Shown: piece by piece, positions 3,041 through 59,970 of the stretch | Numbering within the stretch: position 1 is the first letter of the stretch | How the letters are laid out: each line of letters opens with the position of its first letter | Virus record (IMG/VR): IMGVR_UViG_3300044645_002359 | Span: 1-64,000 of that record | DNA length: 64,000 nt | Reading direction: 5' to 3' (one strand) | Notes under the pieces: generated by a model | The model's database searches: none | Told to the model about the DNA's origin: nothing | The model's input: only the letters and a program-made list of their open reading frames with translations | Program-made: the position numbers and the translations under genes

Positions 3041-3135
3041 TTGTCTGAAAGTAAACTTAATTCAAGTGAGTTTACTTTTCAGCAAGCCCCTATAATAGGG
3101 ATGTAACGCGGGTGAGTGTTTCGCTCCGCGAACTC

Positions 3136-3183
3136 AGATGATTCAGCGATTGACTCCTTCGAACTGGAAAAACAATCATCTAG
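3136..3183 (+). ncRNA. Helix-CAGC(A/G)A module, type 1
   Basis: agatgatt-cagcga...aaaac-aatcatct. Confidence 0.65.
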
Positions 3184-4707: not shown

Positions 4708-4761
4708 AAGATGGTTCAGCAATCTAAAAACTTTCTTTTTGGTAGAAAAACAACCATCTTG
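4708..4761 (+). ncRNA. Helix-CAGCAA module presenting a Gln(TTG)-like anticodon stem-loop
   Basis: aagatggtt-cagcaa...tttct-ttttggt-agaaa...aaccatctt. Confidence 0.75.
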
Positions 4762-7119: not shown

Positions 7120-7136
7120 TTCGCTTCGCAAAGGTT

Positions 7137-7199: not shown

Positions 7200-7205
7200 T
7201 AGAGC

Positions 7206-7382: not shown

Positions 7383-7523
7383 CGAAACCCGTGAGCCGAA
7401 ACCAAAGCAGATACCTCAGAGAGGTTAGAGACTTTCCTACGAAAATTGCTAAGCAACTCTGGAAGAAGTTTGCCAGAAGAGCAGTTAGACTCCGCAACAA
7501 GAAAACCTTTGAACGTGAAAACC

Positions 7524-7751
7524 ATGACAAATACCAACGCGACTGACGCCCAAACTGTGATCCAACAAGGTTTGAAGATCAACCAACTTCTGCGAGAAAT
7601 TGATTCCCTTAAGAGTCTGGCAGAGGATATGATCCACGCTCTAAATATGGCCTCGTATGACGTTGAGGATCCTTCCAAGAGCCACCTGCTGGAGGTGAAC
7701 GCCGACCAATTTAGCGATAGGTTCCTGTCGATTATTCGGTCAGAGCCCTGA
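7524..7751 (+). CDS. Hypothetical protein
   Basis: ORF track, internal ATG. Confidence 0.6.
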   Translation: MTNTNATDAQTVIQQGLKINQLLREIDSLKSLAEDMIHALNMASYDVEDPSKSHLLEVNADQFSDRFLSIIRSEP

Positions 7752-7788
7752 GTTTACTTTCCTAAGGCAACCCTATAATAGGTTCAAC

Positions 7789-7861
7789 GTTCCAGTGGCC
7801 AAGTGGTCTAAGGCTGGTGCCTGCAAAGCACCGATCGTCGGTTCGACTCCGACCTGGAACT
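7789..7861 (+). tRNA. tRNA-Cys(GCA)
   Basis: Loop ctgcaaa; U73. Confidence 0.9.
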
Positions 7862-7890
7862 TTGCGTTAGAGTGAAAATTCTAAAGCCAC

Positions 7891-7964
7891 GCTGGCTTAG
7901 CTCAGTTGGATAGAGCAGCTGTTTTGTAAACAGCAGGTCGTCGGTTCGAGTCCGACAGTCAGCT
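7891..7964 (+). tRNA. tRNA-Thr(TGT)
   Basis: gctgt-tttgtaa-acagc. Confidence 0.9.
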
Positions 7965-7981
7965 TTTTAAATCAATCGAAA

Positions 7982-8221
7982 ATGTCAAGGGTAACCCTAA
8001 AGCAGCTGATCAAACAAGGTTTCGAACAAGAACCTCGTGACGGCACCGTGACAATTTTTCGAAACCTGCGGGACGGAAACTTGTATCGCATCTACCTGGC
8101 TTCCCCACGGATGTATACTGGAAGCCGGTTAATTGCTGAGCGCATGTTTTATCCCAACGGAGTCACAAAGCGGATTCCTGAGTCCCATCAGAAAGATTAC
8201 GTTGTTGTTTCCTATCGATAA
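7982..8221 (+). CDS. Hypothetical protein
   Basis: Tiled + strand ORF. Confidence 0.6.
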   Translation: MSRVTLKQLIKQGFEQEPRDGTVTIFRNLRDGNLYRIYLASPRMYTGSRLIAERMFYPNGVTKRIPESHQKDYVVVSYR

Positions 8222-10423: not shown

Positions 10424-11262
10424 ATGCAGAGTTCTTTTTCAGCTAAAGCTATTGAGACAGTTAACCTTCTCCTGGGTAGTTCAGGCACACTTGACTACAC
10501 ACGTTGTGTAAGACCGGATGGTACCGCCTATGGGACTTCAGGTTCCTGTCGCAAGGGTACGCAGCAAAATAAAGCTGAAATTCGGAAGCTAAAAGCCAAG
10601 ATAAAAGAAGCTGAGGGGGTTATAGAGTACCAGCTGAAAGCAGGCGACCCGGCATACGCAAGTCTCTGGGCCAAGCGATTAGAGGAACACAAAAGAAAAC
10701 TAACCGAACTTGAGGGCAATGAGCCGGTCAAGCCAACTACAAAATCAAACGCTCCAGTCTTAACTGGCGTTGAAAAAAGCGCCTTGGTTAACTATATGAC
10801 CGGGGGCTCCATGGAAACTGGGAATTTGCTGGATATAAACTGGAGGCTCAGGGGATTAGGTGAAGGGCTGATCTCATCTACCGAAAACGAACAAATCAAG
10901 AATCTGGACTCAGCCTTGAAGAAACTACCCGGTAATTCGTCTGGGCAGGAGTTTTATCGGGGTGTATCTTTGGAGCCTGAGCAAGCCAGGAATCTCTTAA
11001 CTTCACTGAAAAGTCAAGGGTCGTGGAAAGACCCAGGTTTTCTTCCTACTCGCGAGACAGAGAACAGGCAGAAGAGTTTGCAGGTCAAGGGGAAGTTTCC
11101 GTCATTTTCATTACGCGGTCCAAAAACTTACGAGATGCCGGTAAATACGCTCCCGAAGAATTTTCGGATCAGCAAGAATCAATCCTCCCCCGGAATACCC
11201 CTTTAAGGGTTACAAACATTAAAAAAGACGGCGAGCTAATTGTGGTCCATCTGGCTGATTGA
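10424..11262 (+). CDS. DFTRC-family protein with C-terminal VIP2/Alt-like ADP-ribosyltransferase; single-base frameshift at 11038-11041
   Basis: YRGV...GFSSYS...DQQESILP once 10424..11206 and 11023..11262 are joined. Confidence 0.75.
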
Positions 11263-21474: not shown

Positions 21475-22083
21475 ATGACCAACTTCCCACCCACAATCCC
21501 ACAAATTAAAGCACTTCGTGAAAAAACTGGGGCAGGTATGATCCTTTGTAAGGAAGCACTTATTAACTCCAAAGGCGATGAAGCAGGGGCAATCACTTGG
21601 CTGCGCCAAAAGGGTATTGTCTTAGCTGATGGTAAAATTGGTAGGGCTGCCAAAGAAGGGATCATCTCCAGCTATATCCATACAGGTGGCAAGATCGGTG
21701 TACTCATCGAAGTGAATTGCGAAACTGATTTTGTGGCAAGATCTGGGCCATTCCAAGAGTTCGTTCGCACTTTGGCAATGCAAATCGCAGCTTGCCCCTC
21801 CGTTAATTACATCTCAATTACCGAAATTCCAGAGTCTATTCTTTTGGACGAGACACGGATCGAAATGAGCAAGGAAGATCTTGCAAAGAAACCCGAAGCA
21901 ATGCGTGGCAAAATTGTTGAAGGTAGGGTAGCCAAACGTTTCAAGGAAATGTCTTTGATGGACCAACCATATATCAAAGATGGCACAATGACTATCGAGA
22001 CTTATGTCAAAAACTTCGCTGCTACGGTTGGCGAAAACATCGTTGTGAAGCGATTCGCTCGCTTCGTTCTCGGCAACTCCTGA
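21475..22083 (+). CDS. tsf: Translation elongation factor Ts, short cyanobacterial type
   Basis: IKALREKTGAGM..CKEAL...EVNCETDFVAR...GENIVVKRFARF. Confidence 0.95.
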   Translation: MTNFPPTIPQIKALREKTGAGMILCKEALINSKGDEAGAITWLRQKGIVLADGKIGRAAKEGIISSYIHTGGKIGVLIEVNCETDFVARSGPFQEFVRTLAMQIAACPSVNYISITEIPESILLDETRIEMSKEDLAKKPEAMRGKIVEGRVAKRFKEMSLMDQPYIKDGTMTIETYVKNFAATVGENIVVKRFARFVLGNS

Positions 22084-24419: not shown

Positions 24420-24660
24420 GGTCTAAGGGCAAAGCCCTACCATACGGCTCAAAACTGGGTGTAGCTCGGGCAGACGTTGCGGTGGACAAGGGGGCAGTAC
24501 CCTTTAGCTCCACTTTCCCTTTACGGGGCTAATCTAGTTTCGACACCGTGAAAGTGTCACTTGAGTGAAAGCCGCTTGCATAAGCACAAAATAGACGCTA
24601 ACAAAATCGTCAAATTCGAGAGGACTGCCGTAGCCGTTTGAGCTATAGCATTCTGACTCA
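24420..24660 (+). ncRNA. ssrA: Circularly permuted (two-piece) tmRNA, tag (A)NKIVKFERTAVAV
   Basis: T arm and acceptor tagctcca end at 24512, upstream of 5' ggggctaatctagtttcgac at 24525; tag frame 24597-24641. Confidence 0.85.
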
Positions 24661-24664
24661 TTGC

Positions 24665-24683
24665 GGGGGCTTCGGCCCCCCTT
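24665..24683 (+). terminator. GC hairpin with TTCG loop after tmRNA
   Basis: gggggc-ttcg-gccccc-tt. Confidence 0.7.
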
Positions 24684-24701
24684 AAACCAATTAGAAACAA
24701 A

Positions 24702-25094
24702 ATGTTGCAAATTACCTACGAGTCAGAACTAGACTCTGACTACAGGAAAGAACTTGATTCTTGCACAAGCGTTCAAGATTTGAAAGCCTTGATTGACAAG
24801 TACAAGGCAGTCTCCCCCGACTTAAAGGATGTTGTAATTGAGAGCGATGCCGATTACAATGAGTTCAAGAAAGGCTTAGCCGTGGAACGAACTGGGCAAT
24901 ATGCTGGTGACGAATGGTGTGAAAGATTTGGCTCTTTGGCCCTTCCTGTCTACATGCTTTACGCTTCACTTTTAGCCGGAGAGTATGGGGCACCTTGGGG
25001 AGTTGCTTACTTTAGAATGTGCGCGGAAGGGGCTGTCCCAGGTGTAGACCCTGAGCTTGCGAAACAAGAAATTTTCTCATTTCTGCCCAGTTAA
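24702..25094 (+). CDS. Hypothetical protein
   Basis: ORF track. Confidence 0.7.
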   Translation: MLQITYESELDSDYRKELDSCTSVQDLKALIDKYKAVSPDLKDVVIESDADYNEFKKGLAVERTGQYAGDEWCERFGSLALPVYMLYASLLAGEYGAPWGVAYFRMCAEGAVPGVDPELAKQEIFSFLPS

Positions 25095-33439: not shown

Positions 33440-34429
33440 ATGATCGCCCTACCCAACGTCAAGGAAGAAACGGTTATCGAGCCGTTAGTCAAAGAACTGA
33501 TTCAGGTTACCGTTGAAACAGAAGGCGGTTTGGGTTACGTTCATAGGAAAACTTTTCAATTCAGTGCAGGAGAGACTCAAGTTCGCCTCAGTCCTTTGCC
33601 TACAGGAGTCAGGAAGATTCGAGTTAGGGCGGATATTGAGAGCAGCCAAACTTTGGTAGAACTTCTTCTGACTTTGGATGCTATTAACAATCTAGAGTAC
33701 CAAGGTCCTGTCGGATTAACCCTCCCATACCTTCCTTACAGCCGTCAAGACCGCGCCTGCGCACCTGGCGAGGCTTTTGCCCTTTCTGTTCTTGTAAACT
33801 GCCTCGTCCCGTATCTCGGTGCCGACGACACTATCACAACTTGGGATGTTCACAGCAGTGTGGCACGAACCCTTTTCGATAGTAAATTCCAGGGAGTATT
33901 CTATAATGTCTCCGCAGCGAGTCTCTTGCAGAATTTTGAGCTTGAAAAAGATGTGGTATTCAATCCCTCAACCATTGTCATTGCCCCAGATAAGGGTGCT
34001 GTAGACCGGGCCACAGAAGTTCAAAATGTCCTGGGACTAGAACGGACCGTGTACGCAACCAAAGTTCGCAATCCGGACGACGGCCAGATCCTAAGAACAG
34101 AAGTTCCCGAAGACGTGAATTACCGAGGCAAAAACCTTTTGATTGTAGACGACATTTGTGATGGTGGCCGCACTTTCATCGAACTTGCCAAGGTTTTGCG
34201 AGAATACGAGCCGTCACGTATTGACCTTTATGTGACACATGGGATCTTCTCAAAAGGTTTCAAAGTTTTTGAGGGCTTTATTGACAACATCTACGTAGCC
34301 AACCTGTTGATGGAACTCATTGAGCACCGCGATGGACGAAAGTCGTTCCCATCAGGTTCTGACCTCTGTGAAAATGTGGGATGTTATAGAGAATTTCCGA
34401 GCAACGTGACTTATCTCCGAAACATTTAA
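33440..34429 (+). CDS. prs: PRPP synthetase-like protein (NARP1 Adps-like)
   Basis: FSAGE...PYLPYSRQDR...DVHS...APDKGA...IVDDICDGGRTF. Confidence 0.9.
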   Translation: MIALPNVKEETVIEPLVKELIQVTVETEGGLGYVHRKTFQFSAGETQVRLSPLPTGVRKIRVRADIESSQTLVELLLTLDAINNLEYQGPVGLTLPYLPYSRQDRACAPGEAFALSVLVNCLVPYLGADDTITTWDVHSSVARTLFDSKFQGVFYNVSAASLLQNFELEKDVVFNPSTIVIAPDKGAVDRATEVQNVLGLERTVYATKVRNPDDGQILRTEVPEDVNYRGKNLLIVDDICDGGRTFIELAKVLREYEPSRIDLYVTHGIFSKGFKVFEGFIDNIYVANLLMELIEHRDGRKSFPSGSDLCENVGCYREFPSNVTYLRNI

Positions 34430-34467
34430 CCCTGCTCGACAACCCAAGTCAAACCTCTTAACAAACA

Positions 34468-35970
34468 ATGAAACTCTTCGCCCCTAACCTTACAGACTTC
34501 TACAAGACGGGTCACTACCGCCAGTACCCTGAAAACACGGAGTTCATCTACTCGAACATGACCGCACGGTCGGACCGTCTCGCCAAGATGCTCCCCGACT
34601 ACGACCACAAAGTAGTGGTAGCAGGTATTCTGGGCACAGCAGCTTGGTACCTTCGCGACCTTTGGAACGATACTTTCTTCAGTCAACCTAAAGACCGAGT
34701 ACTTGAAAAGTACCGCAGGCGAATGGACTCGGCTCTCGGACCTGGCGCCGTGAGCACAGCCCACCTGGCCGAACTTCACGACCTCGGTTACCTTCCAATC
34801 CGAGTAAAGGCTCTCCCAGAAGGCACCCGTGTCAATCTGCGCGTCCCCTTCCTCACGGTGGAGAACACACACCCCGACTTCTATTGGGTGACTAACTACA
34901 TTGAAACTGCCCTGTCGGCTGAAGTTTGGAAGCATGTCAACAATGCAACCATCGCCTACGAGTTTCGCCGCCTACTTGACCGATACGCAGATCTAACAGG
35001 GACTGACCGGTCTTTTGTTGACTTCCAGGCGCACGACTTTTCCTTCCGAGGAGTTAGTGGTATTCACGATGCTGCTGCCCACGGGATTGGACACCTGTTC
35101 TCCTTCAAGGGTACGGACAACATCCCGGCAATTGACTTCTTGGAAGATTACTACAACGTTGAAGGCGAATTTATCGCCGGTGGCGTCCCTGCTACCGAAC
35201 ACAGTGTTATGTGCACCGGGGGCCAAGATACTGAGATTGACACCTACAGGCGTCTGATTTCTGAAACTTACCCGACTGGTATTGTTAGCATTGTTAGCGA
35301 CACTTGGGACTACTGGAACGTTCTCACGAACATTGCTGCCCAACTGGAGGAGACGATCCTGAATCGCCAACCGGATGCCCTTGGCCTTGCCAAAGTTGTA
35401 TTCCGCCCTGATAGTGGAGACCCCGAGAGAATCCTTTGCGGCGACCCGGACGCTGAACCCGGCAGTCCAGCCTTCAAAGGCTCTCTGCAGCTCCTCTGGG
35501 ACCTCTTCGGAGGCACCGTAAACGAGCAGGGCTTCCGCGTCCTTAACCCTCGCGTGGGCCTCATCTACGGTGACTCGATCACCCTTCCTAGAGCTCTTTC
35601 CATTCTGGAGAACATGCACAGCAACGGATGGGCCAGCGGTAACGTTGTTTTCGGTGTGGGTTCGTACACTTACCAGTTCCACACTCGCGATACATTCGGC
35701 ATCGCTTTCAAGACGACTTGGACTCAAATCAACGGTCAACCTGTCGAAGTTATGAAAGATCCGATTACCGACCGTGGAACTAAGAAGTCGGCCAAAGGGT
35801 TGCTTCGTGTTGAAGAAGAGAATGGCGAGTACGTTCTCTACGAGCAACAAAGTCGAGATGAAGAGAGTCGAGGAGAACTGCGAACCGTATTTATGAATAG
35901 CCAGGTCTTCGAAAGACCCGACGAGAGTTTGACGAACATTCGCAGTCGTCTTGTCTCGCCAAATTCCTAA
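34468..35970 (+). CDS. nadV: Nicotinamide phosphoribosyltransferase-like protein (NARP1 Namat-like)
   Basis: TDFYKTGH...HDFSFRG...PATEHSVM...VSDTWD...RPDSGDP...KKSAKG. Confidence 0.92.
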   Translation: MKLFAPNLTDFYKTGHYRQYPENTEFIYSNMTARSDRLAKMLPDYDHKVVVAGILGTAAWYLRDLWNDTFFSQPKDRVLEKYRRRMDSALGPGAVSTAHLAELHDLGYLPIRVKALPEGTRVNLRVPFLTVENTHPDFYWVTNYIETALSAEVWKHVNNATIAYEFRRLLDRYADLTGTDRSFVDFQAHDFSFRGVSGIHDAAAHGIGHLFSFKGTDNIPAIDFLEDYYNVEGEFIAGGVPATEHSVMCTGGQDTEIDTYRRLISETYPTGIVSIVSDTWDYWNVLTNIAAQLEETILNRQPDALGLAKVVFRPDSGDPERILCGDPDAEPGSPAFKGSLQLLWDLFGGTVNEQGFRVLNPRVGLIYGDSITLPRALSILENMHSNGWASGNVVFGVGSYTYQFHTRDTFGIAFKTTWTQINGQPVEVMKDPITDRGTKKSAKGLLRVEEENGEYVLYEQQSRDEESRGELRTVFMNSQVFERPDESLTNIRSRLVSPNS

Positions 35971-41082: not shown

Positions 41083-42131
41083 TACTTGACACTTTCACTA
41101 AGCTCATCTAGACTCATGTCCCGAATGTCTCTCTCCCAGATGTATATTACCGTAAACCCGTATTTCTCCGCAACTCCCTTCTTCTCTATATCCCTCTCCC
41201 AAATTTCTTCCACAAGGGTACTACCCCCTCCCGGAAGGTGAATACTGTCCCCAAACGAATAGATTTCGGGGTTAGCGTGCCAATAGTCCCCCTGGACCTC
41301 TATTAGCACTTTGGTCCCCGTAATCAAAAAGTCAAATTGCCTTCTGGCAACAAATCGAGAGAACTGAAATTTCAGACCCGCAAGTTCTAAAGCTTGAGAC
41401 ACCTTTTCTTCAACCTTGTTCATTTTCGTAAAAAACTTACCACTCAAGAAGTCATCATTGACTTGCTTCCAGAATTTCCTTGTAAGCTCTCCTCTTCTTT
41501 CGGAGTACTCCTGCTTTCTTTCCTCGCCCCACCCCCTTCTCGTTTCCCTGAGTTTTTCTGCTATTGAACTCATCTTTTCCAAGGAAAAAGAAGCTCTAGT
41601 CAGAGAAATTGCCTCCGGGTTGGTAACCCTAAGCTTACCATAGCGCTCAAGATGAGTTTCGTTTATCTTTTCTTTGACATCTGAAAGTTGGAAAACATTG
41701 TCCACCCCGTACTTTGATCTAACTGTTTCATTTCTCTTGTGGTAAAATTCAGTTCCCTTACAGAGAACATTATTCACTCCGTACTTTTCTTGAGAAACTT
41801 TCACCATTTTACTTTTCTTTTGATTTGAACCATTAGCTTCTTTAATTTTTCTTACAGGTATCTCAAAGTAGTCCATTAGAAAAGATAGTCTCCTGCCCGG
41901 TAATCCAAAAAGCTCTTTGAAGTCCGGGAAGCTGAACCCCTTAATCAGGTACAAGTGCTTTAGTTTTCTGCCACTCTCTAGTTTCAGCGCCGGGTAGCTA
42001 AGCTTCAAGGTGTTAAACCTGTACTCCTTTTCCGATAAACCAGGCCCCTTAAGACAGGTTTTCAAATGAATCTTCCTTCCACACTCCTTAAGACAAACAA
42101 AGCAAACCAAACTCTTAACTAGAACCCCCAT
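41043..42131 (-). mobile_element. Free-standing Vsr/DUF559-like homing endonuclease, antisense, between the intein halves
   Basis: KYGVNNV/KYGVDNVFQ repeats; FDF...LIEVQGDYWHA...IYIWERDI. Confidence 0.85.
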
Positions 42132-43008
42132 GAAAATCTCCAAAATAGAAAAGATAGAAAGTGACTCCCACCTATATGATATACAAACTTTTACCCGTAA
42201 CTTCTACGCTGAGGGGGTATTGGTACACAATAGCTTAATCAAGCTCTTCAACTACAACGGGGACTGGATTGTTTCGACGTCCGGATCGGTGGCAGCAGCT
42301 TCGGAAGTTGGTTCCACTGGGCGTTCTTTTGAGGAACTGTTCTGGCTTGTCTTTGACGAAGTTGGTTATTCTCGGGAATGGCTCGATGAGGGTCTGTGCT
42401 ATATCTTCGAACTGTGCCACCGCGATAACCGCATCGTTGTGGATTATGCAGAGCCTCAGTTACCGCTGCTGGCTGTGCGCGACCGTTCCAACGATTTCGA
42501 AGAGCTTGAACTTGTTTCGTTCTGCAACCTGTTCGGGTTCAAAGCTGCCAAGTCGTATGACCTGGGGAGCATGGAAGGCTTGATGGCAGTCGTGAACGAT
42601 CGTGGCGCCGACCACGAAGGGTTTATCCTGTTTGACGGTGTTGGTCGTGCGAAAGCAAAGTCCGATGTGTACTGCCAAATGCACCGTGTTCGCGGAAACG
42701 GCGATCCGGACTTCTCCGAGCTTTTTCTGAACGACGATTTGGAAGAATTCCTACTGCACTTCCCTGAGTACCGTGAGGGCTTCGACGTTCACCTGCGTTC
42801 CATCGACATAATGGAAGTTGCTGTGGAAGAGATCATGGGGGTTTACAACCACTTGAATCAGAAGGACTTTGCTCAAGTTGTAATTGCTAAGGAGAGGGAA
42901 CTGTCGGGGGCTTGTTTTGCGATTCGCTCCGGTAAAGTTGGCTCCTTCGGTCAGTGGCTGGAAGGCTTGTCTCCGAAGAAGCTGGATGCCCTGCTGGGTA
43001 TCAACTGA
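42130..43008 (+). CDS. C-half of split intein (34 aa) plus RNA ligase 1 C-extein
   Basis: MKISKIEK...LYDIQ...NFYAEGVLVHN|SLIKLF..GDW.VSTSG...YIFEL...HEGFILFD...AKAKS. Confidence 0.9.
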   Translation: MKISKIEKIESDSHLYDIQTFTRNFYAEGVLVHNSLIKLFNYNGDWIVSTSGSVAAASEVGSTGRSFEELFWLVFDEVGYSREWLDEGLCYIFELCHRDNRIVVDYAEPQLPLLAVRDRSNDFEELELVSFCNLFGFKAAKSYDLGSMEGLMAVVNDRGADHEGFILFDGVGRAKAKSDVYCQMHRVRGNGDPDFSELFLNDDLEEFLLHFPEYREGFDVHLRSIDIMEVAVEEIMGVYNHLNQKDFAQVVIAKERELSGACFAIRSGKVGSFGQWLEGLSPKKLDALLGIN

Positions 43009-44759: not shown

Positions 44760-44975
44760 CGTCCTGTCAGAACTCTCTACTGAAGACAAGAATCTTTACA
44801 CGGCACTTTTGAGTGTCGTCACAGTTGTAATTCTGCTCCTGCTGGGAATGACCTCTTGTGCTATCACGGAAAGTCGAGAGCGGATTAATAGAACAATCCT
44901 AGATTGCAGAAGTACAGCTGTTAATAGAGTCGAGTCAACAGATACACTCGACTTGATTTGTGGGAAACTGCCTCA

Positions 44976-45716
44976 GTGACACACTCCCGATATGCCATTA
45001 TCGGAGACGTTCACTCTCAAGCATTCCCCTTGAAGAATGCCCTAGACTACTGTTACGATAACAACTTAACTCCAATTATTCTTGGCGACCTTTTTGATTC
45101 GCAGTGTCAGGTTTCAGAGTCAGTTTCTGTTTACAACCTTGTAAGAAAGTCTCAGGGCGATCTTGGAGCGATTGTACTTCGCTCGAACCACCAGCACCTC
45201 CTTGAGAAACTTATCAAAAAAGAAGAGGTTTCCCTTAAAAAAGACTTGTGTAAAACAGTCAGAGAGTTTCAAGAGGCAGGAATTTGTCTAACTGAGGTAG
45301 GGCAGTGGCTTGAAACTTTCCCTTACGTTTTCGCCTTCCGAGACTCTCGAGGACAAGAGTACAGAGTCGCTCACGCGGAAATTCCTGCTTCAGTAAAGGT
45401 ACCGAACTTCGATCAAACCTGGATGTATCTTCACCCCACGGAACAAGAGCTGCGATGCCTGCTTTGGGGCGCCGATTACTCCCTGCCCAACCGTGACCGG
45501 TTCTGGTGGCTCGGGAAGCCCGAGAGGGACTGGGTAGCCGTCGCGGGCCATTACCACAAGGTTGTCAACGATGGCCGCTCTCTCGTCCTCGACGCTGGGT
45601 GTGGAGGGAAGACCCGCGCCTGGTACGACAAGCGTCCCCCTGCGTTACTTCTCTACGACGTTGAGGTCCAAAGCCTGATTGAATTCCCGGCTTTTGATAA
45701 CTCGGTCGTAGGGTAA
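44976..45716 (+). CDS. Calcineurin-like metallophosphoesterase (paralog A)
   Basis: GDVHSQ...LGDLFD...SNHQ...AH...GHYH. Confidence 0.85.
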   Translation: MTHSRYAIIGDVHSQAFPLKNALDYCYDNNLTPIILGDLFDSQCQVSESVSVYNLVRKSQGDLGAIVLRSNHQHLLEKLIKKEEVSLKKDLCKTVREFQEAGICLTEVGQWLETFPYVFAFRDSRGQEYRVAHAEIPASVKVPNFDQTWMYLHPTEQELRCLLWGADYSLPNRDRFWWLGKPERDWVAVAGHYHKVVNDGRSLVLDAGCGGKTRAWYDKRPPALLLYDVEVQSLIEFPAFDNSVVG

Positions 45717-48780: not shown

Positions 48781-48815
48781 TATTGCATGAACATGACACG
48801 AGCCTAATCTACAAA

Positions 48816-49940
48816 ATGGCAAACATCGAACGCAAACTTGCATCTGTCCGCAAAGTAACGGACATTCGCCCCATCCCCGACGCTGACGCCATCGAATGCG
48901 CCATTGTAGGTGGTGGTTGGCCCGTGGTAGTGAAAAAGGGAGAATTTCAGGTTGGCGACCTCGCCATCTACTTCGAGATTGATTCCTGGATTCCTCACGA
49001 ACTTGCCCCATTCCTCTCCAAGGGGAAGAAACCAAGGGAGTATAATGGAGTGAAGGGGGAGAGGCTGAAAACTGTCAGGCTCCGTGGTCAAGTCTCCCAG
49101 GGTCTCCTGCTCCGCTTCTCGGACATCTCTCCAAGCTTCTACGTTGTCTCGCTAGCCGAACCTTACGGGGGGAGGGAATTTCTCCGAGTTGATCAGTGCG
49201 TGTGGGAGGAAGGTGAGGACTTCACTCTAGAGTTCGGAATTCAGAAATGGGAAGCTCCTGTCCCAGCTTGCTTGGCTGGTCAAGTTCGCGGGAACTTTCC
49301 TAGCTTCCTCGTGAAGACGGACCAGGAACGTTGTCAGAATGTTGTGGAGGAAATCTTTGAGCGCCATAAGGGTGAAACCTACGAAGTTACTATCAAACTT
49401 GATGGGTCTTCCTGCACGGTCTACGTCAAGGACGGGGAAGTTGGGGTGTGCAGCCGTAACCTTGACCTCAAGGAAACCGAAGGCAATAGTTTCTGGAAGG
49501 CTGCTAGGGATCAGGGCATTATCGATGCTATGCTTGCATACAATGGGAAGACTGGTCACAGTATTGCCTTGCAGTCGGAAACCCTTGGAGAAGGCATCCA
49601 GGGCAACCAGGAAGGAATCAAGGGACAACGCCTATTCCTGTTTGACATCTTCGATATCGACAGCCAAACTTACATGAAGCCAGGGGCCAGAATGAACCTC
49701 TTGGACAAGTACCTAGTTCCATTAGGCGCTGATTTAACCCATACCCCTGTCCTACACCCCGCAATGTGTGTAACTGATAGTTCCGCCAACCTTGATGAGC
49801 TACTAGCGTACGCCGATGGCCCGTCCATGAACCCCAAAGTCAAACGCGAAGGCTTAGTATTCAAGTCCAATGACTCTGAGTTTTCCTTCAAGGCCATTAG
49901 TAATGAATGGCTCTTATCCAAGGGAAAGAAGGGTGGCTGA
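48816..49940 (+). CDS. RNA ligase, Rnl2/DRB0094 family
   Basis: RKLASVRKV...YFEIDS...SQGL...KTDQER...KLDGSS...EGLVFK...FKAISNEWL. Confidence 0.92.
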   Translation: MANIERKLASVRKVTDIRPIPDADAIECAIVGGGWPVVVKKGEFQVGDLAIYFEIDSWIPHELAPFLSKGKKPREYNGVKGERLKTVRLRGQVSQGLLLRFSDISPSFYVVSLAEPYGGREFLRVDQCVWEEGEDFTLEFGIQKWEAPVPACLAGQVRGNFPSFLVKTDQERCQNVVEEIFERHKGETYEVTIKLDGSSCTVYVKDGEVGVCSRNLDLKETEGNSFWKAARDQGIIDAMLAYNGKTGHSIALQSETLGEGIQGNQEGIKGQRLFLFDIFDIDSQTYMKPGARMNLLDKYLVPLGADLTHTPVLHPAMCVTDSSANLDELLAYADGPSMNPKVKREGLVFKSNDSEFSFKAISNEWLLSKGKKGG

Positions 49941-53973: not shown

Positions 53974-54792
53974 ATGTCTGTCACTAAAGTTGCAATCGGC
54001 TCTGGCGCCATTCTCCTTTCTCTGGTTCTAGCCGCAGGCCAATTTACCACAATTAGCACGGGTGAAAATGGTCTTTACATTGGCTTCGATGGCCAAGTCA
54101 AAAACGAAGTGCTGACCCCAGGCATCAAGTACGACGGGTTGGGCTCCATCAAGGTGTTTAACACTCGTAAGATCACTGTCACAGCGAACGACCTTCGTCC
54201 CAAGACTAAAGATAACACCATCATGAAAGAGATGGACGTCACGGTTACTTACAGCATTAATCCTAACTCCCTTTACGAGTTTTTCACCAACTACGACCTT
54301 ACCAACCACGGTATTGCCGAAAACGGTCAGCTTCAACTGATGTCAAGTTACATCTCTCGTCTTATTACATCCGCTGTTAACCAGTCGGTAGACGAATTCC
54401 CTGCTTTGGCTGTTAACAGTAGTCTTGAGCAAATTCAAGACACAATTAAGGCCAACCTTTCGGAAGCTTTACAGAAAAATGGTCTTGAAGGTAAGATCAC
54501 CGTGGATTCAATCATAGTTGGCAAGGCAGACCTTCCTGACGACCTGGTTGCCTCGGTTAACCGTGTGGTTGCCGCTCAGTCGGGTTTGAAAGAACAACAA
54601 GTTAGGACAGAAACTGCCCAATTGAAGGCGGAAGAGAACAAAGCTCTGGCTTCTACCGTTACCGCACAATCGTTGGAATACCAGCGAAATGAAATCCTGA
54701 AGGCTGCCTTTGCCAACGGATCCATTCAGAAGATGGTTATCATCAACGGTGCCAAGATGGACTTTCTGCCCGGTGGCTTGACCGATAAGTAA
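53974..54792 (+). CDS. SPFH/band 7 (prohibitin-like) membrane protein
   Basis: N-terminal TM segment, SPFH fold, C-terminal coiled coil. Confidence 0.8.
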   Translation: MSVTKVAIGSGAILLSLVLAAGQFTTISTGENGLYIGFDGQVKNEVLTPGIKYDGLGSIKVFNTRKITVTANDLRPKTKDNTIMKEMDVTVTYSINPNSLYEFFTNYDLTNHGIAENGQLQLMSSYISRLITSAVNQSVDEFPALAVNSSLEQIQDTIKANLSEALQKNGLEGKITVDSIIVGKADLPDDLVASVNRVVAAQSGLKEQQVRTETAQLKAEENKALASTVTAQSLEYQRNEILKAAFANGSIQKMVIINGAKMDFLPGGLTDK

Positions 54793-56477: not shown

Positions 56478-56567
56478 TTGCCGAGAGTTTACCGTCTACC
56501 CCTGGCCCTATGTTAGGGCTGTCGGTGTCCACGCCGCCATTTCCCTAGGGTAACCCCGGGAACAAAG

Positions 56568-56593
56568 TTGATACAGCCATCACTTGTATCCAA
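56568..56593 (+). promoter_or_regulatory. CAGCCA hairpin in the leader of the TROVE-like gene
   Basis: ttgataca-gccatcact-tgtatc(c)aa. Confidence 0.55.
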
Positions 56594-56624
56594 AACACAA
56601 AAACAATCAACTTGAGAGAAGAAA

Positions 56625-58118
56625 ATGACAACCTTTTTGAACGCACTCGAAAACGAATTCAATACTACGACCACAGCCAACGGCGCAAAAGCCTATAAGT
56701 CCACAGGTTCCAAGAACCTGGACCTTTTCGGGAAGATTGCAGCCTGCCGCAACGACGTTAGCGAAGCAACTCGCCTATTCAACCTTGCTTATGCTGAAGA
56801 CCCTGAGACCGCAACCAGAATCCTGTTCTGGGCACGTGACATTCGCGGTGGCCAGGGTGAGCGTAAGATCTTCCGAGAAGTTTTCAAGGAGCTGGTTCGC
56901 AATGATGCTACAATCGGCGCGAAACTCATTAGTTTGATCCCGCAGTATGGACGCTGGGATGATGTGGTAGCCCTTGAAGGCACCCTAGTTTGGAATGTTG
57001 CACTCGAGGCAATCAAGGCACAGCTGAACGCTGACTTGAACACCGAAGTTGGAAACTCCGTGTCATTGCTTGCGAAATGGCTCCCTTCCATTAACGCCTC
57101 TAGCAAGGAGTCTAAGAGGATTGGCCGCAAGATTGCCGAGGCAATGGGTTGGAATGAGCGTCAATATCGCAAGGCTTTGACTGCTCTTAGGACACAAATC
57201 AAAATTGTCGAACAGGCAATGTGTGCCCGTGAGTGGGATGCCATTGATTATAGCAAGTTGCCTTCTCGTGCAGGCTTCATGTATCGGAAAGCTTTCGCAA
57301 ATCGTGATGGCGACCGTTACCAGTCCTACCTGGATGCAGTTAAAAAAGGTGAAGCAAAGATCAATGCCGGTACTTTGTATCCGTATGACATCGTTGAGAA
57401 GTGTCTCTACAACCAAGAATCCAATGATACTCTAGAAGTAATGTGGAAAGCCCTGCCGAACTTCATGGAGGGCAAGGAATTGAATGGGCTTGTTGTTGCC
57501 GATGTTAGCCGTTCTATGTCAGGCCGTCCAATGGCAGTATCCATCTCTCTGGCGATGTATATCGCAGAGCGTAATACCGGCATCTGGAAGGACAAGTTCC
57601 TAACATTCTCAGGGAATCCTTCTCTACAGACTGTGACTGGCAGTAGCCTTTCAAACAAGGTTCGCAACCTTAGCCGAGCAGATTGGGGCGGTAACACTGA
57701 TATTCAGAAGACGTTTGACCTTATTCTGGATACTGCAGTTCGGAACAACATTCCAGAGTCAGACATGCCCCGCAAACTGATTATTGTCTCAGACATGCAG
57801 TTTGATAACTGTGTTATCATGGGAGGTAATTACTCCGGTCGTATGAGTTATGGCGGAGCCCGAGTCACCAACTACGAAGCAATCCGCATCAAGTACGCTC
57901 AAGCTGGCTACAGCTTGCCCGAAGTTATCTTCTGGAATGTCGATTCCTCAGATAACGTCCCGATGAAGGCACATGATTCCGGTACCGCTCTCGTTAGCGG
58001 TTGCTCTCCGTCAATCCTGACCGCAGTTCTTACCAGAAACGCAATCACCCCATTGTCCCTAATGAGAGATGCTGTTTATACTGAAAGGTATGACGCTGTG
58101 GGTGCGGTCTTTAACTGA
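56625..58118 (+). CDS. TROVE/Ro60-related DUF2828 + vWA protein
   Basis: T.NGA.AY.STG...LDLF...RDIRGG.GER...YGRWDD...AKWLPS...ADVSRSM...SDMQFD...FWNV...SG.SP. Confidence 0.85.
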   Translation: MTTFLNALENEFNTTTTANGAKAYKSTGSKNLDLFGKIAACRNDVSEATRLFNLAYAEDPETATRILFWARDIRGGQGERKIFREVFKELVRNDATIGAKLISLIPQYGRWDDVVALEGTLVWNVALEAIKAQLNADLNTEVGNSVSLLAKWLPSINASSKESKRIGRKIAEAMGWNERQYRKALTALRTQIKIVEQAMCAREWDAIDYSKLPSRAGFMYRKAFANRDGDRYQSYLDAVKKGEAKINAGTLYPYDIVEKCLYNQESNDTLEVMWKALPNFMEGKELNGLVVADVSRSMSGRPMAVSISLAMYIAERNTGIWKDKFLTFSGNPSLQTVTGSSLSNKVRNLSRADWGGNTDIQKTFDLILDTAVRNNIPESDMPRKLIIVSDMQFDNCVIMGGNYSGRMSYGGARVTNYEAIRIKYAQAGYSLPEVIFWNVDSSDNVPMKAHDSGTALVSGCSPSILTAVLTRNAITPLSLMRDAVYTERYDAVGAVFN

Positions 58119-58305
58119 TGGAAAGGACCCTAGTAACTACGTTAATGTCAGCCCAGGGTCTTCTCCTTGGGTTGAAGTTAACAGGGCAAATAGCCTGGTC
58201 GTGGCTGTGGGTGTTTAGTCCTATTTTAGTTGTAAGCTGTGGGTTAGGGTTACTTATCCTCCTATTGATCCTAGGGTTGATGGGCGGTAAGTAAGGCAGA
58301 CCCGT

Positions 58306-58359
58306 AAGATGGTTCAGCAATCAAACCTTTCTTTGTAACAGAAAAAACCAACCATCTTG
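58306..58359 (+). ncRNA. Helix-CAGCAA module presenting a Tyr(GTA)-like anticodon stem-loop
   Basis: aagatggtt-cagcaa...tttct-ttgtaac-agaaa...aaccatctt. Confidence 0.75.
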
Positions 58360-58403
58360 TTTAAATAAAGTCAACTTCCCTGGTAGTTCACCGGGGCAAC
58401 AAT

Positions 58404-58520
58404 GGGGAATGGTGCAATGGCAGCACACGTAATTAACGGTTACCTTGGATAAGGTACAGACAGCAATTACAAAAATTCCATTCCACGGACGTGACGGAGG
58501 TTCGATTCCTTCTTCCCCAT
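58404..58520 (+). ncRNA. tRNA body (Gly TCC-like) with CAGCAA hairpin inserted in the anticodon stem
   Basis: D and T arms; gtacctt-ggat-aaggtac-aga-cagcaa; cc-attccac-gg. Confidence 0.7.
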
Positions 58521-58719
58521 TTTCGAAAATCAACTCAAGCAATCAACAATGAAGTCATCTCATCTTTACACTTTGATCGGTGTTGTAGCACTGTGGTTTG
58601 TATTGACCTTGACACTAATTCTCAAGGAAAACTATCAAGGTGCTATCGGAACCGGATTGGCCCTTTTCTTTTCCTCGGTTGGTACGATAGGTGTTGTTGC
58701 CCATTTTGAAGGGAACAGG

Positions 58720-58782
58720 CGGTAAACCGCCCCATGTGGTTCGGTTTGCACCCTTGTTTTCGCACCGCGAAAACGCTATGAT
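58720..58782 (+). promoter_or_regulatory. Class I repeated promoter
   Basis: cggtaaaccg; TTGTTT-17-TATGAT; ATG 58789. Confidence 0.85.
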
Positions 58783-58788
58783 TATAAC

Positions 58789-59232
58789 ATGAACCAAGAG
58801 ACCTACTTCCCTTGCTCTCGCCAGATCGAGATCCTCGATCAGCACGAGAACGCCAACGAGATTCCTCCGTACGTTAATTATCTGGTGCGGTTTGAGAACC
58901 CCTACGGTGGAGAAAGTGTCGGAGTGGTAATTGAGCCCAACTCCGAAGGCGTCGAAGAAGTTTACACTAACCAGAAATTTCCGGTAGCTTCCATGCTTCC
59001 TGGCCAATCGGAAAATGACGAGCTTCTGCTCAACCTTTTCCGCACCTGGGTGTTGACTCCGCCGATGTTTACACAAGTCACTGTTCGTCAACAGACGGAC
59101 AAGTTCTACACCTTGAGTTTTCACAATCAGCACTGGAATTTCCATGCCCGCTCTCGGAACCTCTCGTACATCAAAGGGAAGATTCGGAACCTAGCAAAGT
59201 CCCGTGATGTGAAGGTCACCTGGGAGGTTTGA
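58789..59232 (+). CDS. Hypothetical protein (leaderless)
   Basis: ATG 6 nt after -10. Confidence 0.7.
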   Translation: MNQETYFPCSRQIEILDQHENANEIPPYVNYLVRFENPYGGESVGVVIEPNSEGVEEVYTNQKFPVASMLPGQSENDELLLNLFRTWVLTPPMFTQVTVRQQTDKFYTLSFHNQHWNFHARSRNLSYIKGKIRNLAKSRDVKVTWEV

Positions 59233-59272
59233 CTCCAAGTTTACCTCCCTCCTTGAGGCCTATGCTGTTTTT

Positions 59273-59363
59273 GAGACGAGTCAGCGTTAACTAAAGGATA
59301 ATGCGAGACAGTTAAAAACTTTTTCAGCTAGGTGGTTCAAATCCACTGTCAACACTCATCTTG
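59273..59363 (+). ncRNA. Y-RNA-like module: terminal helix, CAGCG and internal T arm
   Basis: gagacgagt-cagcg...gtgg-ttcaaat-ccac...actcatctt; starts at predicted +1 of the TATGCT promoter. Confidence 0.65.
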
Positions 59364-59377
59364 TTCACAAATAAAAC

Positions 59378-59501
59378 CGAAGAGTAGACAAGTGGTTAGG
59401 CAGCGGTAATGCAAAAAAGATTATCTAGTTTAGGTGATTCAGCAATACCCTAATACGCTAAAAGGAACCGCCATACGCAAGTTCGAATCTTGCCTCTTCG
59501 A
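59378..59501 (+). ncRNA. tRNA body with CAGCAA hairpin inside the anticodon loop
   Basis: cgaagag/ctcttcg; gcggt..accgc encloses gattatcta-gtt-taggtgatt-cagcaa. Confidence 0.7.
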
Positions 59502-59521
59502 TTGTTTTTCTTTGAAAACGT

Positions 59522-59570
59522 AGATAGTTCAGCAATTCACCCTAACTCAATAAGGAAAACAACTATCTTG
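59522..59570 (+). ncRNA. Helix-CAGCAA module, type 1
   Basis: agatagtt-cagcaa...cct-aactcaata-agg...aactatct. Confidence 0.7.
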
Positions 59571-59609
59571 CTGAATCTAGTTTCAACAAACTATTTGCGA
59601 AGCAAATAA

Positions 59610-59727
59610 GGGACCGTAGCTCAACTGGTAGAGCGCTAAATAAAAGTTATCTTGTACAAGATACGTCAGCAATTAAAAAATACCTCGTTTAAAGGAGTGG
59701 TTGCAGGTTCGAGTCCTGCCGGTCCCA
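59610..59727 (+). ncRNA. tRNA body (Lys TTT-like) with CAGCAA hairpin between the D and anticodon arms
   Basis: gggaccg/cggtccc; tatcttg-tac-aagata-cgt-cagcaa; cct-cgtttaa-agg. Confidence 0.7.
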
Positions 59728-59970
59728 TTTACCCCAAGTCTAGCCATGAAAATTTCACGGTTGTTACCCTGCTGGCCTGCACAGTGCTAACTCTCTCGCC
59801 AACGTGGGCAAAATACCAGAGTCTAATCACTGGCGCAAACCCGGAGGAAGTTCAAGAAAATGCCTTCAAGAAAAGTATGAGCTATCCGGTGGGCTCTCTC
59901 AAGTGTAGCCAGCGTTGTTCTCAGTGGTGGCATCACGACTGACTTAGCATCAAGAGTAAAAAAGTTTAAC

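What the first reader, a model, noticed from the sequence alone, without database searches (positions are those of the whole stretch)
56568..59727. Candidate new RNP system: TROVE/DUF2828 protein plus a family of helix-CAGCAA RNA modules
Seen in sequence: a TROVE-like vWA gene is followed within 1.7 kb by six RNA elements (58306, 58404, 59273, 59378, 59522, 59610). Each has a 7-9 bp helix whose strand ends in CAGC(A/G)A or CAGCG, followed by an A-rich linker and a tRNA-derived part. Further copies lie in the tRNA array (3136, 4708, probably 883) and in the gene's own leader (56568). Helix sequences differ but keep pairing (agatggtt/aaccatct, agatagtt/aactatct, agatgatt/aatcatct). Established: Ro60/Rsr TROVE proteins bind Y RNAs, and bacterial YrlA RNAs mimic tRNA. 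Inference: this divergent TROVE protein binds helix-CAGCAA and tethers tRNA fragments, acting as a tRNA decoy, protection or repair scaffold. I cannot confirm whether the motif is already catalogued.
Basis: partly seen in the sequence, partly recalled or inferred. Interest (0 to 1): 0.9.

Follow-up and report, generated by a model that had tools for sequence, protein, structure and literature searches.

The report
Phage Ro60-like protein with partner RNAs
A cyanophage-like genome encodes a Ro60-shaped protein of an unstudied family beside a set of small structured RNAs that share one stem plus a CAGCAA signature; the same gene-RNA pairing recurs in very different phages, and the RNAs resemble the unexplained "Class I" RNAs of social amoebae.

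Summary
Nine copies of one RNA module lie on the + strand: a leader copy at 56565, six copies downstream of the gene, and two in the tRNA array. Each has a 7-10 bp helix (P1) whose strand runs into CAGC(A/G/C)(A/U), followed by A-rich sequence. P1 shows compensatory changes (5 of 9 pairs, 0/500 shuffles).

There are two topologies. In one, P1 joins the 5' and 3' ends of a ~50-90 nt RNA. In the other, P1 is a closed hairpin replacing the anticodon loop of a complete tRNA-like body.

The gene (DUF2828+DUF7788) has no sequence match to Ro60, but its model matches phage and animal Ro60 over its full length. Same-strand modules lie near DUF2828 genes in about 14 of 17 sampled phage lineages, and often in the gene's leader.

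Rfam has no family for them. The only weak match, found for the modules of other phages, is the Dictyostelium Class I RNA family, which has the same layout and the motif UUACAGCAA.

Best reading: a Ro60/Y-RNA-like ribonucleoprotein with an autoregulatory leader, acting in tRNA surveillance or repair. Binding and function are untested.

The parts
56565..56614 (+). Leader module. P1 is AAGUUGAU / AUCAACUU, followed by CAGCCA and an A-rich loop. It ends 10 nt before the start codon.
   Evidence: Model R1 scores 60.5 bits. The same leader copy is present in all close relatives and in phage B3. Other lineages also have a module 22 nt or less before the start codon: L016, L025 and L029.
56625..58118 (+). 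497-aa protein with DUF2828 and DUF7788 (vWA-like) domains; a Ro60/TROVE-like fold.
   Evidence: Pfam PF11443 (2e-36) and PF25043 (4e-47). PHROG 850 'RNA-binding protein' (4e-152). AlphaFold2 model with pLDDT 70.5. Foldseek: 9KOP at E 2e-8 and Ro60 1YVR/1YVP at 1e-4, full length. The DxSxS residues D293, S295 and S297 are invariant.
58306..58359 (+). Free-standing module A. P1 is AAGAUGGUU / AACCAUCUU, followed by CAGCAAU, an inner hairpin UUUCU/AGAAA, then AAAAACC.
   Evidence: R1 scores 66.7 bits. Conserved in L002, L011 and L012.
58403..58520 (+). tRNA-like body B. The acceptor, D and T arms are intact. The anticodon loop is replaced by hairpin 58441-58456 plus CAGCAA at 58461-58466.
   Evidence: Rfam tRNA scores 41.5 bits with a 58-nt insert. 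ARAGORN does not call it. Conserved in L002 and L012.
59271..59363 (+). Cloverleaf-like element F. P1 takes the place of the acceptor stem and is followed by CAGCG. Two hairpins follow, then a T arm at 59331-59347 next to the 3' strand of P1.
   Evidence: Fold. The L002 7238-7327 counterpart has a wholly different but perfect 10-bp P1 (z-score -4.4).
59378..59501 (+). tRNA-like body C. The anticodon stem GCGGU/ACCGC encloses hairpin 59419-59439 plus CAGCAA at 59440-59445.
   Evidence: The hairpin covaries among relatives (GAUUAUCUA/UAGGUGAUU, GAUUACCUA/UAGGUAAUU, GACUAUCUAG/UUAGGUAGUU). The L002 counterpart scores as tRNA in Rfam at 47.8 bits.
59521..59570 (+). Free-standing module D. P1 is UAGAUAGUU / AACUAUCUU, followed by CAGCAAU.
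   Evidence: R1 scores 53.7 bits. Conserved in L003-L015.
59610..59727 (+). tRNA-like body E, with hairpin 59648-59663 plus CAGCAA at 59667-59672 in place of the anticodon loop.
   Evidence: Rfam tRNA scores 50.1 bits with a 58-nt insert. Conserved in L002, L003 and L011. Phage B3 annotates its counterpart as tRNA-Pseudo.
4708..4761 (+). Free-standing module in the tRNA array, directly after tRNA-Phe; a near-paralogue of module A.
   Evidence: R1 scores 59.8 bits. Sequence.
3135..3183 (+). Free-standing module in the tRNA array. P1 is AGAUGAUU / AAUCAUCU, followed by CAGCGA.
   Evidence: R1 scores 53.8 bits. Sequence.

Best explanation
The 497-aa DUF2828/DUF7788 protein is a divergent Ro60 (TROVE)-type ring protein with a vWA domain. 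The helix-CAGCAA modules are its RNA partners, so the locus encodes a Y-RNA-like ribonucleoprotein.

The recognition element is the P1 helix together with the junction it opens into. CAGCAA lies 3' of one strand and A-rich sequence lies 5' of the other. This junction comes in three contexts:

1. In small RNAs of about 50-90 nt, P1 joins the two ends. These RNAs are embedded like tRNAs in tRNA arrays or beside the gene, and are probably released by tRNA-processing enzymes.
2. In tRNA-like bodies, the same junction sits as a capped hairpin where the anticodon loop should be. This would couple the protein to something that recognises the shape of a tRNA.
3. In the leader of the protein's own mRNA, the junction ends 10 nt before the start codon. 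There the protein would repress its own translation.

By analogy with Ro60/Y RNA/PNPase and the rsr-yrlA-rtcBA operon, the particle most likely works in surveillance, protection or repair of tRNAs during infection. The genome also carries 35 tRNAs, a tmRNA and two RNA ligases.

Shown here: the protein fold, the RNA family and its covariation, and the genomic association. Inferred: direct binding, autoregulation, processing, and the tRNA-related function.
For: - Fold: the only full-length structural matches are phage phiRo60 (9KOP, E 2e-8, TM about 0.5) and Ro60. The MIDAS residues are invariant.
- RNA family: model R1 finds only + strand copies in the window. Covariation is supported.
- Association across lineages: modules lie on the gene's strand within about 1.5 kb of DUF2828 in phage B3, FelixO1-like, mycobacteriophage, Listeria, Staphylococcus, Campylobacter, Bacillus, Enterococcus, Aeromonas LAh_6 (eight in tandem), BUCT-ZZ01 and four IMG/VR lineages. 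Aeromonas Aeh1 carries only the hairpin type, about 2.6 kb downstream of the gene. A strict descriptor gives 41 hits on the gene strand, 7 on the opposite strand, and about 5 per strand in shuffles.
- Reverse test: 115 IMG/VR loci were picked by RNA pattern alone. Twelve hold DUF2828 within the fetched flank, all 12 on the same strand.
- Leader copies 22 nt or less from the start codon occur in several lineages.
- Precedent: phiRo60 binds two Y-like RNAs encoded upstream of its gene (PMC12135203). YrlA RNAs mimic tRNA and lie next to rsr (PMC4201824).
- RNA-repair context: RNA ligases at 42130-43008 and 48783-49940. RtcB, RNA ligase or CCA-adding enzyme genes lie within 4 kb of DUF2828 in other phages.
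Against: - No binding, expression or processing data exist.
- Neither Pfam nor a profile search of PDB sequences links the protein to TROVE by sequence. The model is of moderate confidence (pLDDT 70.5, TM 0.4-0.5).
- Two window copies lie about 52 kb from the gene. Thirteen of 19 full modules found by pattern had no DUF2828 in the fetched flank. Adjacency is therefore frequent but not obligatory, and genome-level co-occurrence was not measured.
- Three DUF2828 lineages showed no module within 3-4 kb: CBB, an Erwinia jumbo phage and Staphylococcus phage PG-2021_15.
- The modules sit in tRNA arrays, so a role tied to tRNA processing alone is not excluded.
Confidence: 0.6

Rival explanations
1. 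The modules are tRNA-array accessories: minimal tRNA mimics or processing punctuation read by host RNase P, RNase Z or CCA-adding enzyme. On this view they do not depend on the DUF2828 protein, and the protein is merely another gene common in tRNA-rich phages.
For: Thirteen of 19 pattern-found modules lie between same-strand tRNA genes at tRNA-like spacing. P1 is 7-10 bp, like an acceptor stem. Some copies are full cloverleaves with a T arm next to the 3' strand. Two window copies lie about 52 kb from the gene.
Against: This does not explain the invariant CAGCAA. It does not explain the copies placed immediately before the DUF2828 start codon in several lineages, or the runs of 3-8 modules abutting the gene in phages where they are not within a tRNA array (LAh_6, Staphylococcus, mycobacteriophage). 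It does not explain the closed-hairpin version inside tRNA-like bodies. The T4 tRNA cluster, which has no DUF2828 gene nearby, has no module.
Confidence: 0.15
2. The three tRNA-like elements are intron-containing tRNA genes. The hairpin-CAGCAA segment is an intron, removed by an endonuclease and sealed by the phage RNA ligases. The free-standing copies are related or decayed forms.
For: The Rfam tRNA model matches end to end with a single 58-nt insert in the anticodon arm. The phage encodes two RNA ligases. Annotators have called the counterparts tRNA-Val (122 nt) and tRNA-Pseudo.
Against: Removing the insert leaves no canonical 7-nt loop with U33 in any of the three. No Rfam intron family appeared among the matches at E up to 10, and no splicing motif was looked for. 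The same module occurs as an independent unit and in an mRNA leader. The inserts are conserved as such across relatives that are 77-93% identical, and in distant lineages.
Confidence: 0.08
3. The repeats act at the DNA level, as miniature inverted-repeat mobile elements or as recombination or homing sites that spread within tRNA arrays.
For: The element has short inverted repeats flanking about 40 bp, and multiple copies per genome. HNH endonuclease genes are present in these regions.
Against: The inverted repeats differ between copies but stay complementary. That fits an RNA helix, not a shared transposase or nuclease site. There is a strong strand bias in the direction of transcription: 41 against 7, and 12 of 12. 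G-U pairs are tolerated. The orthologous position is conserved across relatives.
Confidence: 0.04

Closest known systems
Ro60 (TROVE) - Y RNA ribonucleoproteins, including bacterial Rsr-YrlA and Thermus phage phiRo60-Yrl1/Yrl2
   Same: - The protein is a ring of helical repeats plus a vWA domain with MIDAS residues.
- The partner RNAs are encoded directly beside the gene, and there are several per locus.
- The RNAs have a terminal stem plus an internal loop, and some carry a tRNA-like domain.
- One FelixO1-type copy even has the permuted order seen in YrlA: T arm, closed acceptor stem, D arm.
- RNA ligase or RtcB genes lie nearby.
   Different: - The protein has no detectable sequence similarity to TROVE and belongs to other Pfam families, DUF2828 and DUF7788.
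- The RNAs lack a YrlA match (RF02553 gives no hit in the window at E up to 10). They carry CAGCAA rather than the conserved CGAA-type motif described for YrlA and the phiRo60 partner RNAs (PMC4201824, PMC12135203).
- In the window's tRNA-like versions the RNA ends are in the acceptor stem, and the protein-type helix is a capped hairpin at the anticodon position. This is the reverse of YrlA.
- The leader copy suggests autoregulation; none of the Ro60 text read here mentions this.
Dictyostelid Class I RNAs (Rfam RF01414; Kjellin et al. 2021, PMC7919456)
   Same: - Similar size, about 55-65 nt.
- A short terminal stem with many compensatory changes.
- A conserved single-stranded motif directly 3' of the 5' strand. 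In Dictyostelium it is CCUUACAGCAA. In Staphylococcus and Felix-type phages it is (C)UUACAGCAA(U).
- An A-rich run (AAAAACC) before the 3' strand.
- They start with AAG and end with CU(G/U)G.
- The P1 of the window's leader, GUUGAU/AUCAAC, nearly equals the D. discoideum stem GUUGAC/GUCAAC.
- RF01414 is the best Rfam match for 4 of the 4 non-cyanophage modules it scored well on.
   Different: - Scores are 19.7-22.4 bits against a gathering score of 41.5.
- The window's own copies are not hit at all, because they lack the UUA spacer.
- The source is a phage genome, not a nuclear one, and there is no DUSE promoter.
- The known direct binder in Dictyostelium is the RRM protein Rnp1A.
- The Dictyostelium RNAs were reported as unique to Dictyostelia.
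- Whether Dictyostelium has a DUF2828 protein could not be tested here.
tRNA (RF00005) and phage tRNA-array stable RNAs (T4 species 1/2, rnaC/rnaD)
   Same: Three elements keep acceptor, D and T arms and score as tRNA or close to it. The free-standing copies sit in tRNA arrays, as T4 rnaC and rnaD do.
   Different: They have no anticodon loop. T4 rnaC and rnaD carry no helix-CAGCAA module.

Membership tests
Ro60/TROVE protein family | Sequence match to the TROVE domain or to solved Ro60 proteins | tested here: not met
   Pfam gives only DUF2828, DUF7788 and a weak VWA_2 match. Neither phmmer nor a 15-sequence profile finds Ro60 among PDB sequences.
Ro60/TROVE protein family | Helical-repeat ring followed by a vWA domain (overall fold) | tested here: met
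   Foldseek with the AlphaFold2 model gives 9KOP (phiRo60) at E 2e-8, TM 0.48/0.51. It gives 1YVR, 1YVP, 9NEP and 2I91 at E about 1e-4, TM about 0.42. All are full-length alignments, and lower hits match only the vWA domain. The model is only of moderate confidence (pLDDT 70.5).
Ro60/TROVE protein family | MIDAS motif (DxSxS) in the vWA domain | tested here: met
   D293, S295 and S297 are invariant in 15 homologues sharing 37-85% identity.
Ro60/TROVE protein family | Binds Y-type RNAs through a conserved helix | not testable with these tools
   This needs EMSA, RIP or a structure.
YrlA / Y RNA (RF02553, RF00019) | Covariance-model score at or above the gathering score | tested here: not met
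   No YrlA or Y RNA hit in window 58100-59800 at E up to 10, and none at gathering threshold in the whole window. The only YrlA hit is a 23-bit match in L016, which spans two separate tRNA-like genes.
YrlA / Y RNA (RF02553, RF00019) | Encoded beside the gene for the ring protein; terminal stem plus internal loop; tRNA-like domain in at least one copy | tested here: met
   The topology of the tRNA-like copies differs from YrlA, except for L021 5418-5553.
Dictyostelium Class I RNA (RF01414) | Covariance-model score at or above 41.5 bits | tested here: not met
   The window has no hit. The FelixO1-like phage scores 20.1 and 19.7 bits. The Staphylococcus phage scores 22.4 bits twice. All four are full-model alignments, with E between 0.05 and 0.2 in about 250 nt.
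Dictyostelium Class I RNA (RF01414) | Short terminal stem kept by compensatory change | tested here: met
Dictyostelium Class I RNA (RF01414) | 11-nt motif CCUUACAGCAA next to the 5' strand of the stem | tested here: inconclusive
   The window copies keep CAGC(A/G/C)(A/U)U directly after the stem, without UUA. Most copies in other phages have (N)UA CAGCAA, and one Staphylococcus copy has CUUACAGCAAU.
Dictyostelium Class I RNA (RF01414) | Nuclear gene with a DUSE promoter in a dictyostelid | tested here: not met
   The context here is a phage contig.
tRNA (RF00005), for 58403-58520 and 59610-59727 | Covariance-model score at or above 29 bits | tested here: met
   41.5 and 50.1 bits.
tRNA (RF00005), for 58403-58520 and 59610-59727 | Seven-nucleotide anticodon loop with an anticodon | tested here: not met
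   58 nt replace the central 11-13 model positions. ARAGORN calls none of the three. No canonical loop is left after removing the insert.

The most novel reading that the evidence does not exclude
The DUF2828 protein and the helix-(UUA)CAGCAA RNA form an ancient ribonucleoprotein shared by phages and eukaryotes. On this reading the Class I RNAs of Dictyostelia, so far thought unique to social amoebae and of unknown mechanism, are its eukaryotic branch. A DUF2828-type Ro60-like protein would then be their missing partner. The family is present in plants, and possibly in amoebae; the uncharacterised DdR-21 pull-down protein DDB_G0281243 is one candidate to check. The RNA itself may be a reduced tRNA, with P1 as the acceptor stem.
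Probability: 0.3. Interest if true: 0.95.

Novelty: new variant of a known kind. Interest (0 to 1): 0.85.

Why it matters
DUF2828 proteins occur in about 700 sequenced phages, including the FelixO1, Listeria P100-type, staphylococcal, mycobacterial and Campylobacter groups used in phage therapy and biocontrol. They have thousands of metagenomic relatives. No function has been tested and no partner RNA described.

Showing that these proteins form a second, sequence-unrelated Ro60/Y-RNA-like particle would have three consequences:
- It would add a widespread class of phage non-coding RNAs.
- It would explain many 'pseudo-tRNA' and over-long tRNA annotations.
- It would give a handle on how tRNA-rich phages guard their translation apparatus.

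The resemblance to Dictyostelium Class I RNAs would matter too. If it reflects common descent or a common partner, a 20-year-old open question about what those abundant RNAs do would become directly testable.

Tried and rejected
- Rfam at gathering threshold on the window and on eight loci returned only tRNA and tmRNA.
- A YrlA match for the window: none.
- An RF01414 match for the window's leader: none.
- PDB sequence searches with the protein and with a profile found no Ro60. NCBIfam gave nothing.
- A general covariance model for all phage lineages could not be built. MAFFT would not keep the 3' strands of P1 in register. I used a Python descriptor with shuffles instead.
- I tried to pull out long (eukaryotic) DUF2828 homologues by placing a 1000-aa unrelated first sequence in the query alignment. 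It failed: the search followed the first sequence.
- Whether Dictyostelium has a DUF2828 protein, and what DDB_G0281243 is, could not be settled from the papers or their truncated supplementary proteomes.
- T4 species 1 and 2 RNAs were examined as possible relatives. They have no module.
- The background rate from the pattern-selected IMG/VR loci was not usable as a clean control, because every locus was chosen to contain the anchor.
- The consensus promoter and terminator scan around the locus was uninformative.


Full report
**What is there**

The window is part of an uncultivated ~201-kb phage contig; IMG/VR locus L014 carries an identical copy of the DUF2828 protein. It carries 35 tRNA genes and a permuted tmRNA. 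Its nearest sequenced relative for the gene in question is Synechococcus phage B3, at 58% amino-acid identity.

ORF 56625-58118 encodes a 497-aa protein. It matches Pfam DUF2828 and DUF7788 (a vWA-like domain) and PHROG 850, 'RNA-binding protein'.

**Anatomy of the RNA module**

The common unit is a 7-10 bp helix, P1. One strand of P1 is followed at once by CAGC(A/G/C)(A/U)U. The other strand is preceded by an A-rich run, typically AAAAC(C). Two topologies exist.

- *Type 1.* These are 56565, 58306, 59521, 3135 and 4708, and, with a larger interior, 59271. P1 joins the 5' and 3' ends of a 50-90 nt unit. The interior is a small hairpin. In 59271-59363 it is two hairpins plus a T arm, which gives a cloverleaf with P1 in place of the acceptor stem.
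- *Type 2.* These are 58403-58520, 59378-59501 and 59610-59727. A complete tRNA-like body (acceptor, D and T arms) carries P1 as a capped hairpin, followed by CAGCAAU, where the anticodon loop should be. The Rfam tRNA model aligns end to end with a 58-nt insert. ARAGORN calls none of them.

In both types the A-rich run lies 5' of one P1 strand and CAGCAA lies 3' of the other. The two types therefore look like circular permutations of one junction. This is an inference.

Each tRNA-like body is preceded by a type-1 unit.

**More than chance**

- TCAGCAAT occurs 11 times against 2.3 expected.
- Covariance model R1, built from 14 cyanophage copies, finds five hits in the 64-kb window. All are on the + strand, with E between 1e-8 and 1e-11. 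It also recovers copies in phage B3 that were not in the seed alignment.
- On 22 distinct sequences, 94.9% of P1 cells pair and 5 of 9 pairs change on both sides. None of 500 shuffles reaches the covariation score. Slid controls fall to 18-56% paired.
- RNAalifold predicts the same helix on its own.
- The hairpin of the type-2 elements also covaries among relatives.
- The suspected copy at 883 is a 160-nt tRNA-like element with, at best, a degenerate internal mini-copy.

**The protein**

Sequence methods do not connect it to Ro60.

An AlphaFold2 model (pLDDT 70.5) was searched against the PDB. The only full-length matches are these:
- 9KOP, the Ro60 homologue of Thermus phage phiLo: E 2e-8, TM 0.48/0.51.
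- Xenopus and human Ro60 (1YVR, 1YVP, 9NEP, 2I91): E about 1e-4, TM about 0.42.

Lower hits cover only the vWA domain. The DxSxS MIDAS residues are invariant in the family. The protein is therefore Ro60-like in architecture, but belongs to a separate and experimentally uncharacterised sequence family. No functional paper was found.

**Association of gene and RNA across phages**

Phage B3 has the same leader copy, three type-1 copies and a type-2 'tRNA-Pseudo' around its gene. Fourteen IMG/VR relatives (77-100% identical) keep all element types.

Distant homologues (30-45% identity) also have same-strand modules next to the gene:

| Phage | Modules |
|---|---|
| FelixO1-like FO1a | 3, plus 1 with a permuted tRNA-like interior |
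| Mycobacteriophage DyoEdafos | 3 |
| Listeria LP-066 | 3 |
| Staphylococcus S-CoN_Ph8 | 3 |
| Campylobacter F360 | 2 |
| Bacillus Skywalker | 4 |
| Enterococcus GVEsP-1 | 3 |
| Aeromonas LAh_6 | 8 in tandem, up to the start codon |
| Synechococcus BUCT-ZZ01 | 2 |
| Aeromonas Aeh1 | 2 type-2 bodies, one annotated as a 122-nt tRNA-Val |
| Four IMG/VR lineages | several each |

None was seen within 3-4 kb in Pectobacterium CBB, an Erwinia jumbo phage or Staphylococcus PG-2021_15.

A strict descriptor gives 41 hits on the gene strand, 7 on the other strand, and about 5 per strand in dinucleotide shuffles.

In the reverse direction, 115 IMG/VR loci were picked by an RNA pattern alone. Twelve contain DUF2828 in the fetched flank, all 12 on the same strand, 44-3123 nt away. 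By comparison, only about 1.4% of sequenced phage genomes have the gene at all.

Thirteen of the 19 full modules found in that way lie between same-strand tRNA genes.

A module ends 22 nt or less before the start codon in the window and in B3, L016, Campylobacter F360 and BUCT-ZZ01.

**Relation to known RNAs**

No Rfam family reaches threshold. YrlA does not match the window.

The only family that matches type-1 modules is RF01414, the Class I RNA of Dictyostelium. It matches two FelixO1-type and two staphylococcal copies with full-model alignments. Scores are 19.7-22.4 bits, with E between 0.05 and 0.2 per ~250 nt, against a gathering score of 41.5.

The Rfam consensus is a 6-bp terminal stem, then CUUACAGCAAU, an A-rich stretch ending in AAAAACC, the 3' strand, and UG. 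That is the same layout as the phage modules.

Kjellin et al. (PMC7919456) describe Class I RNAs as follows:
- About 60 nt long.
- A terminal stem kept by compensatory changes.
- The 11-nt motif CCUUACAGCAA beside the 5' strand.
- They start with AAG and end with CUGU.
- They were reported as unique to Dictyostelia.

The D. discoideum stem GUUGAC/GUCAAC nearly equals the P1 of the window's leader, GUUGAU/AUCAAC.

The window's own copies lack the UUA spacer and are not detected by RF01414. This is a resemblance bridged by other phage lineages, not family membership.

DdR-21 pull-downs recovered Rnp1A, GuaB, NdkC and an uncharacterised protein, DDB_G0281243 (bioRxiv 10.1101/2020.04.05.026054). 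I could not determine whether that protein, or any other dictyostelid protein, belongs to DUF2828. The family does occur in plants.

**How it most likely works**

The best-supported reading is a Ro60/Y-RNA-type particle. The ring protein binds the P1-CAGCAA junction. The variable part of the RNA is a small hairpin, a cloverleaf or a whole tRNA-like body, and it presents a tRNA shape to other factors. The leader copy lets the protein repress its own translation.

Two precedents support this. phiRo60 binds two Y-like RNAs encoded upstream of its gene and recruits host PNPase (PMC12135203). Bacterial YrlA RNAs mimic tRNA and sit next to rsr, often with rtcB (PMC4201824).

The genomic context points to tRNA upkeep:
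- The window holds two RNA ligases, a phosphoesterase, EF-Ts, a tmRNA and 35 tRNAs.
- RtcB, Rnl2 or CCA-adding enzyme genes lie within 4 kb of DUF2828 in Listeria LP-066, LAh_6 and CBB.
- Mycobacteriophage LeBron, whose Ro-like protein (gp53) presumably belongs to this family (cluster L mycobacteriophage proteins annotated Ro-like match the window protein at 38-39% identity), also encodes an RNA ligase and a polynucleotide kinase (PMC13148394).

Binding, processing, autoregulation and the tRNA-related role are all inferences.

**Rivals**

1. Accessories of tRNA arrays that are independent of the protein.
2. Intron-containing tRNA genes.
3. DNA-level mobile or recombination repeats.

Each explains part of the picture. 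None accounts for the invariant CAGCAA, the leader copies, the strand bias and the covarying stems together.

**Verdict**

This is a new variant of the Ro60/Y-RNA kind, built from a different protein family and a different RNA motif, with an unexpected likeness to Dictyostelium Class I RNAs.

Noticed in passing
window 1-8000: Besides the called tRNAs, the tRNA array holds many orphan T-arm-like hairpins in series (about 190-260, 1470-1560, 2341-2436, 3230-3370, 4060-4110). Two 'tRNAs' have odd anticodon loops (2165-2237, 4478-4549). A 160-nt tRNA-like element lies at 883-1042.
   Followed up: partly
window 2625-2690, 3780-3850, 5880-5945, 7135-7205, 58724-58790: A repeated block, GGTTCGGTT ... 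TTGTTT, 17 nt, TATGAT, lies just upstream of ORF starts. It is probably a phage early promoter with an upstream element.
   Followed up: no
window 24423-24732: Permuted (two-piece type) tmRNA: Rfam RF04321 at 73 bits, and ARAGORN reads the tag peptide as ANKIVKFERTAVAV. This fits a cyanobacterial host.
   Followed up: no
window 42130-43008, 44958-45716, 48783-49940: Two RNA ligases (Rnl1-like and Rnl2-like/PHA02142) and a metallophosphoesterase: an RNA-repair set in the same genome as the Ro60-like protein.
   Followed up: partly
window 33440-35970, 21475-22083, 53974-54792, 10424-11206: PRPP synthetase plus NAMPT (NAD salvage), an EF-Ts homologue, and a Band-7/SPFH protein. One ORF has a weak, sub-threshold match to an ADP-ribosyltransferase family.
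   Followed up: no
L021 5418-5553 (Salmonella phage FO1a): This module's interior is a permuted tRNA-like domain (T arm, closed acceptor stem, D arm). The topology is that of bacterial YrlA, but with P1-UUACAGCAA as the terminal stem.
   Followed up: partly
L148 3026-3994 (Aeromonas phage LAh_6): Eight tandem modules run up to the DUF2828 gene. The annotated CDS start (3911) overlaps the last two modules and is probably too far upstream.
   Followed up: no
L028 7061-7173 and 7193-7311 (Aeromonas phage Aeh1); L001 9866-9975 (Synechococcus phage B3): Elements annotated as a 122-nt tRNA-Val and as a tRNA-Pseudo are type-2 chimeras. Here the motif reads CUGCAA or CCGCAA, and part of it can pair with an upstream triplet.
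   Followed up: partly
window 58118-58294, 58549-58725, 58789-59232: Three small ORFs are interleaved with the RNA elements. The first matches PHROG 1374 (unknown function, membrane-like). The other two have no family match.
   Followed up: no
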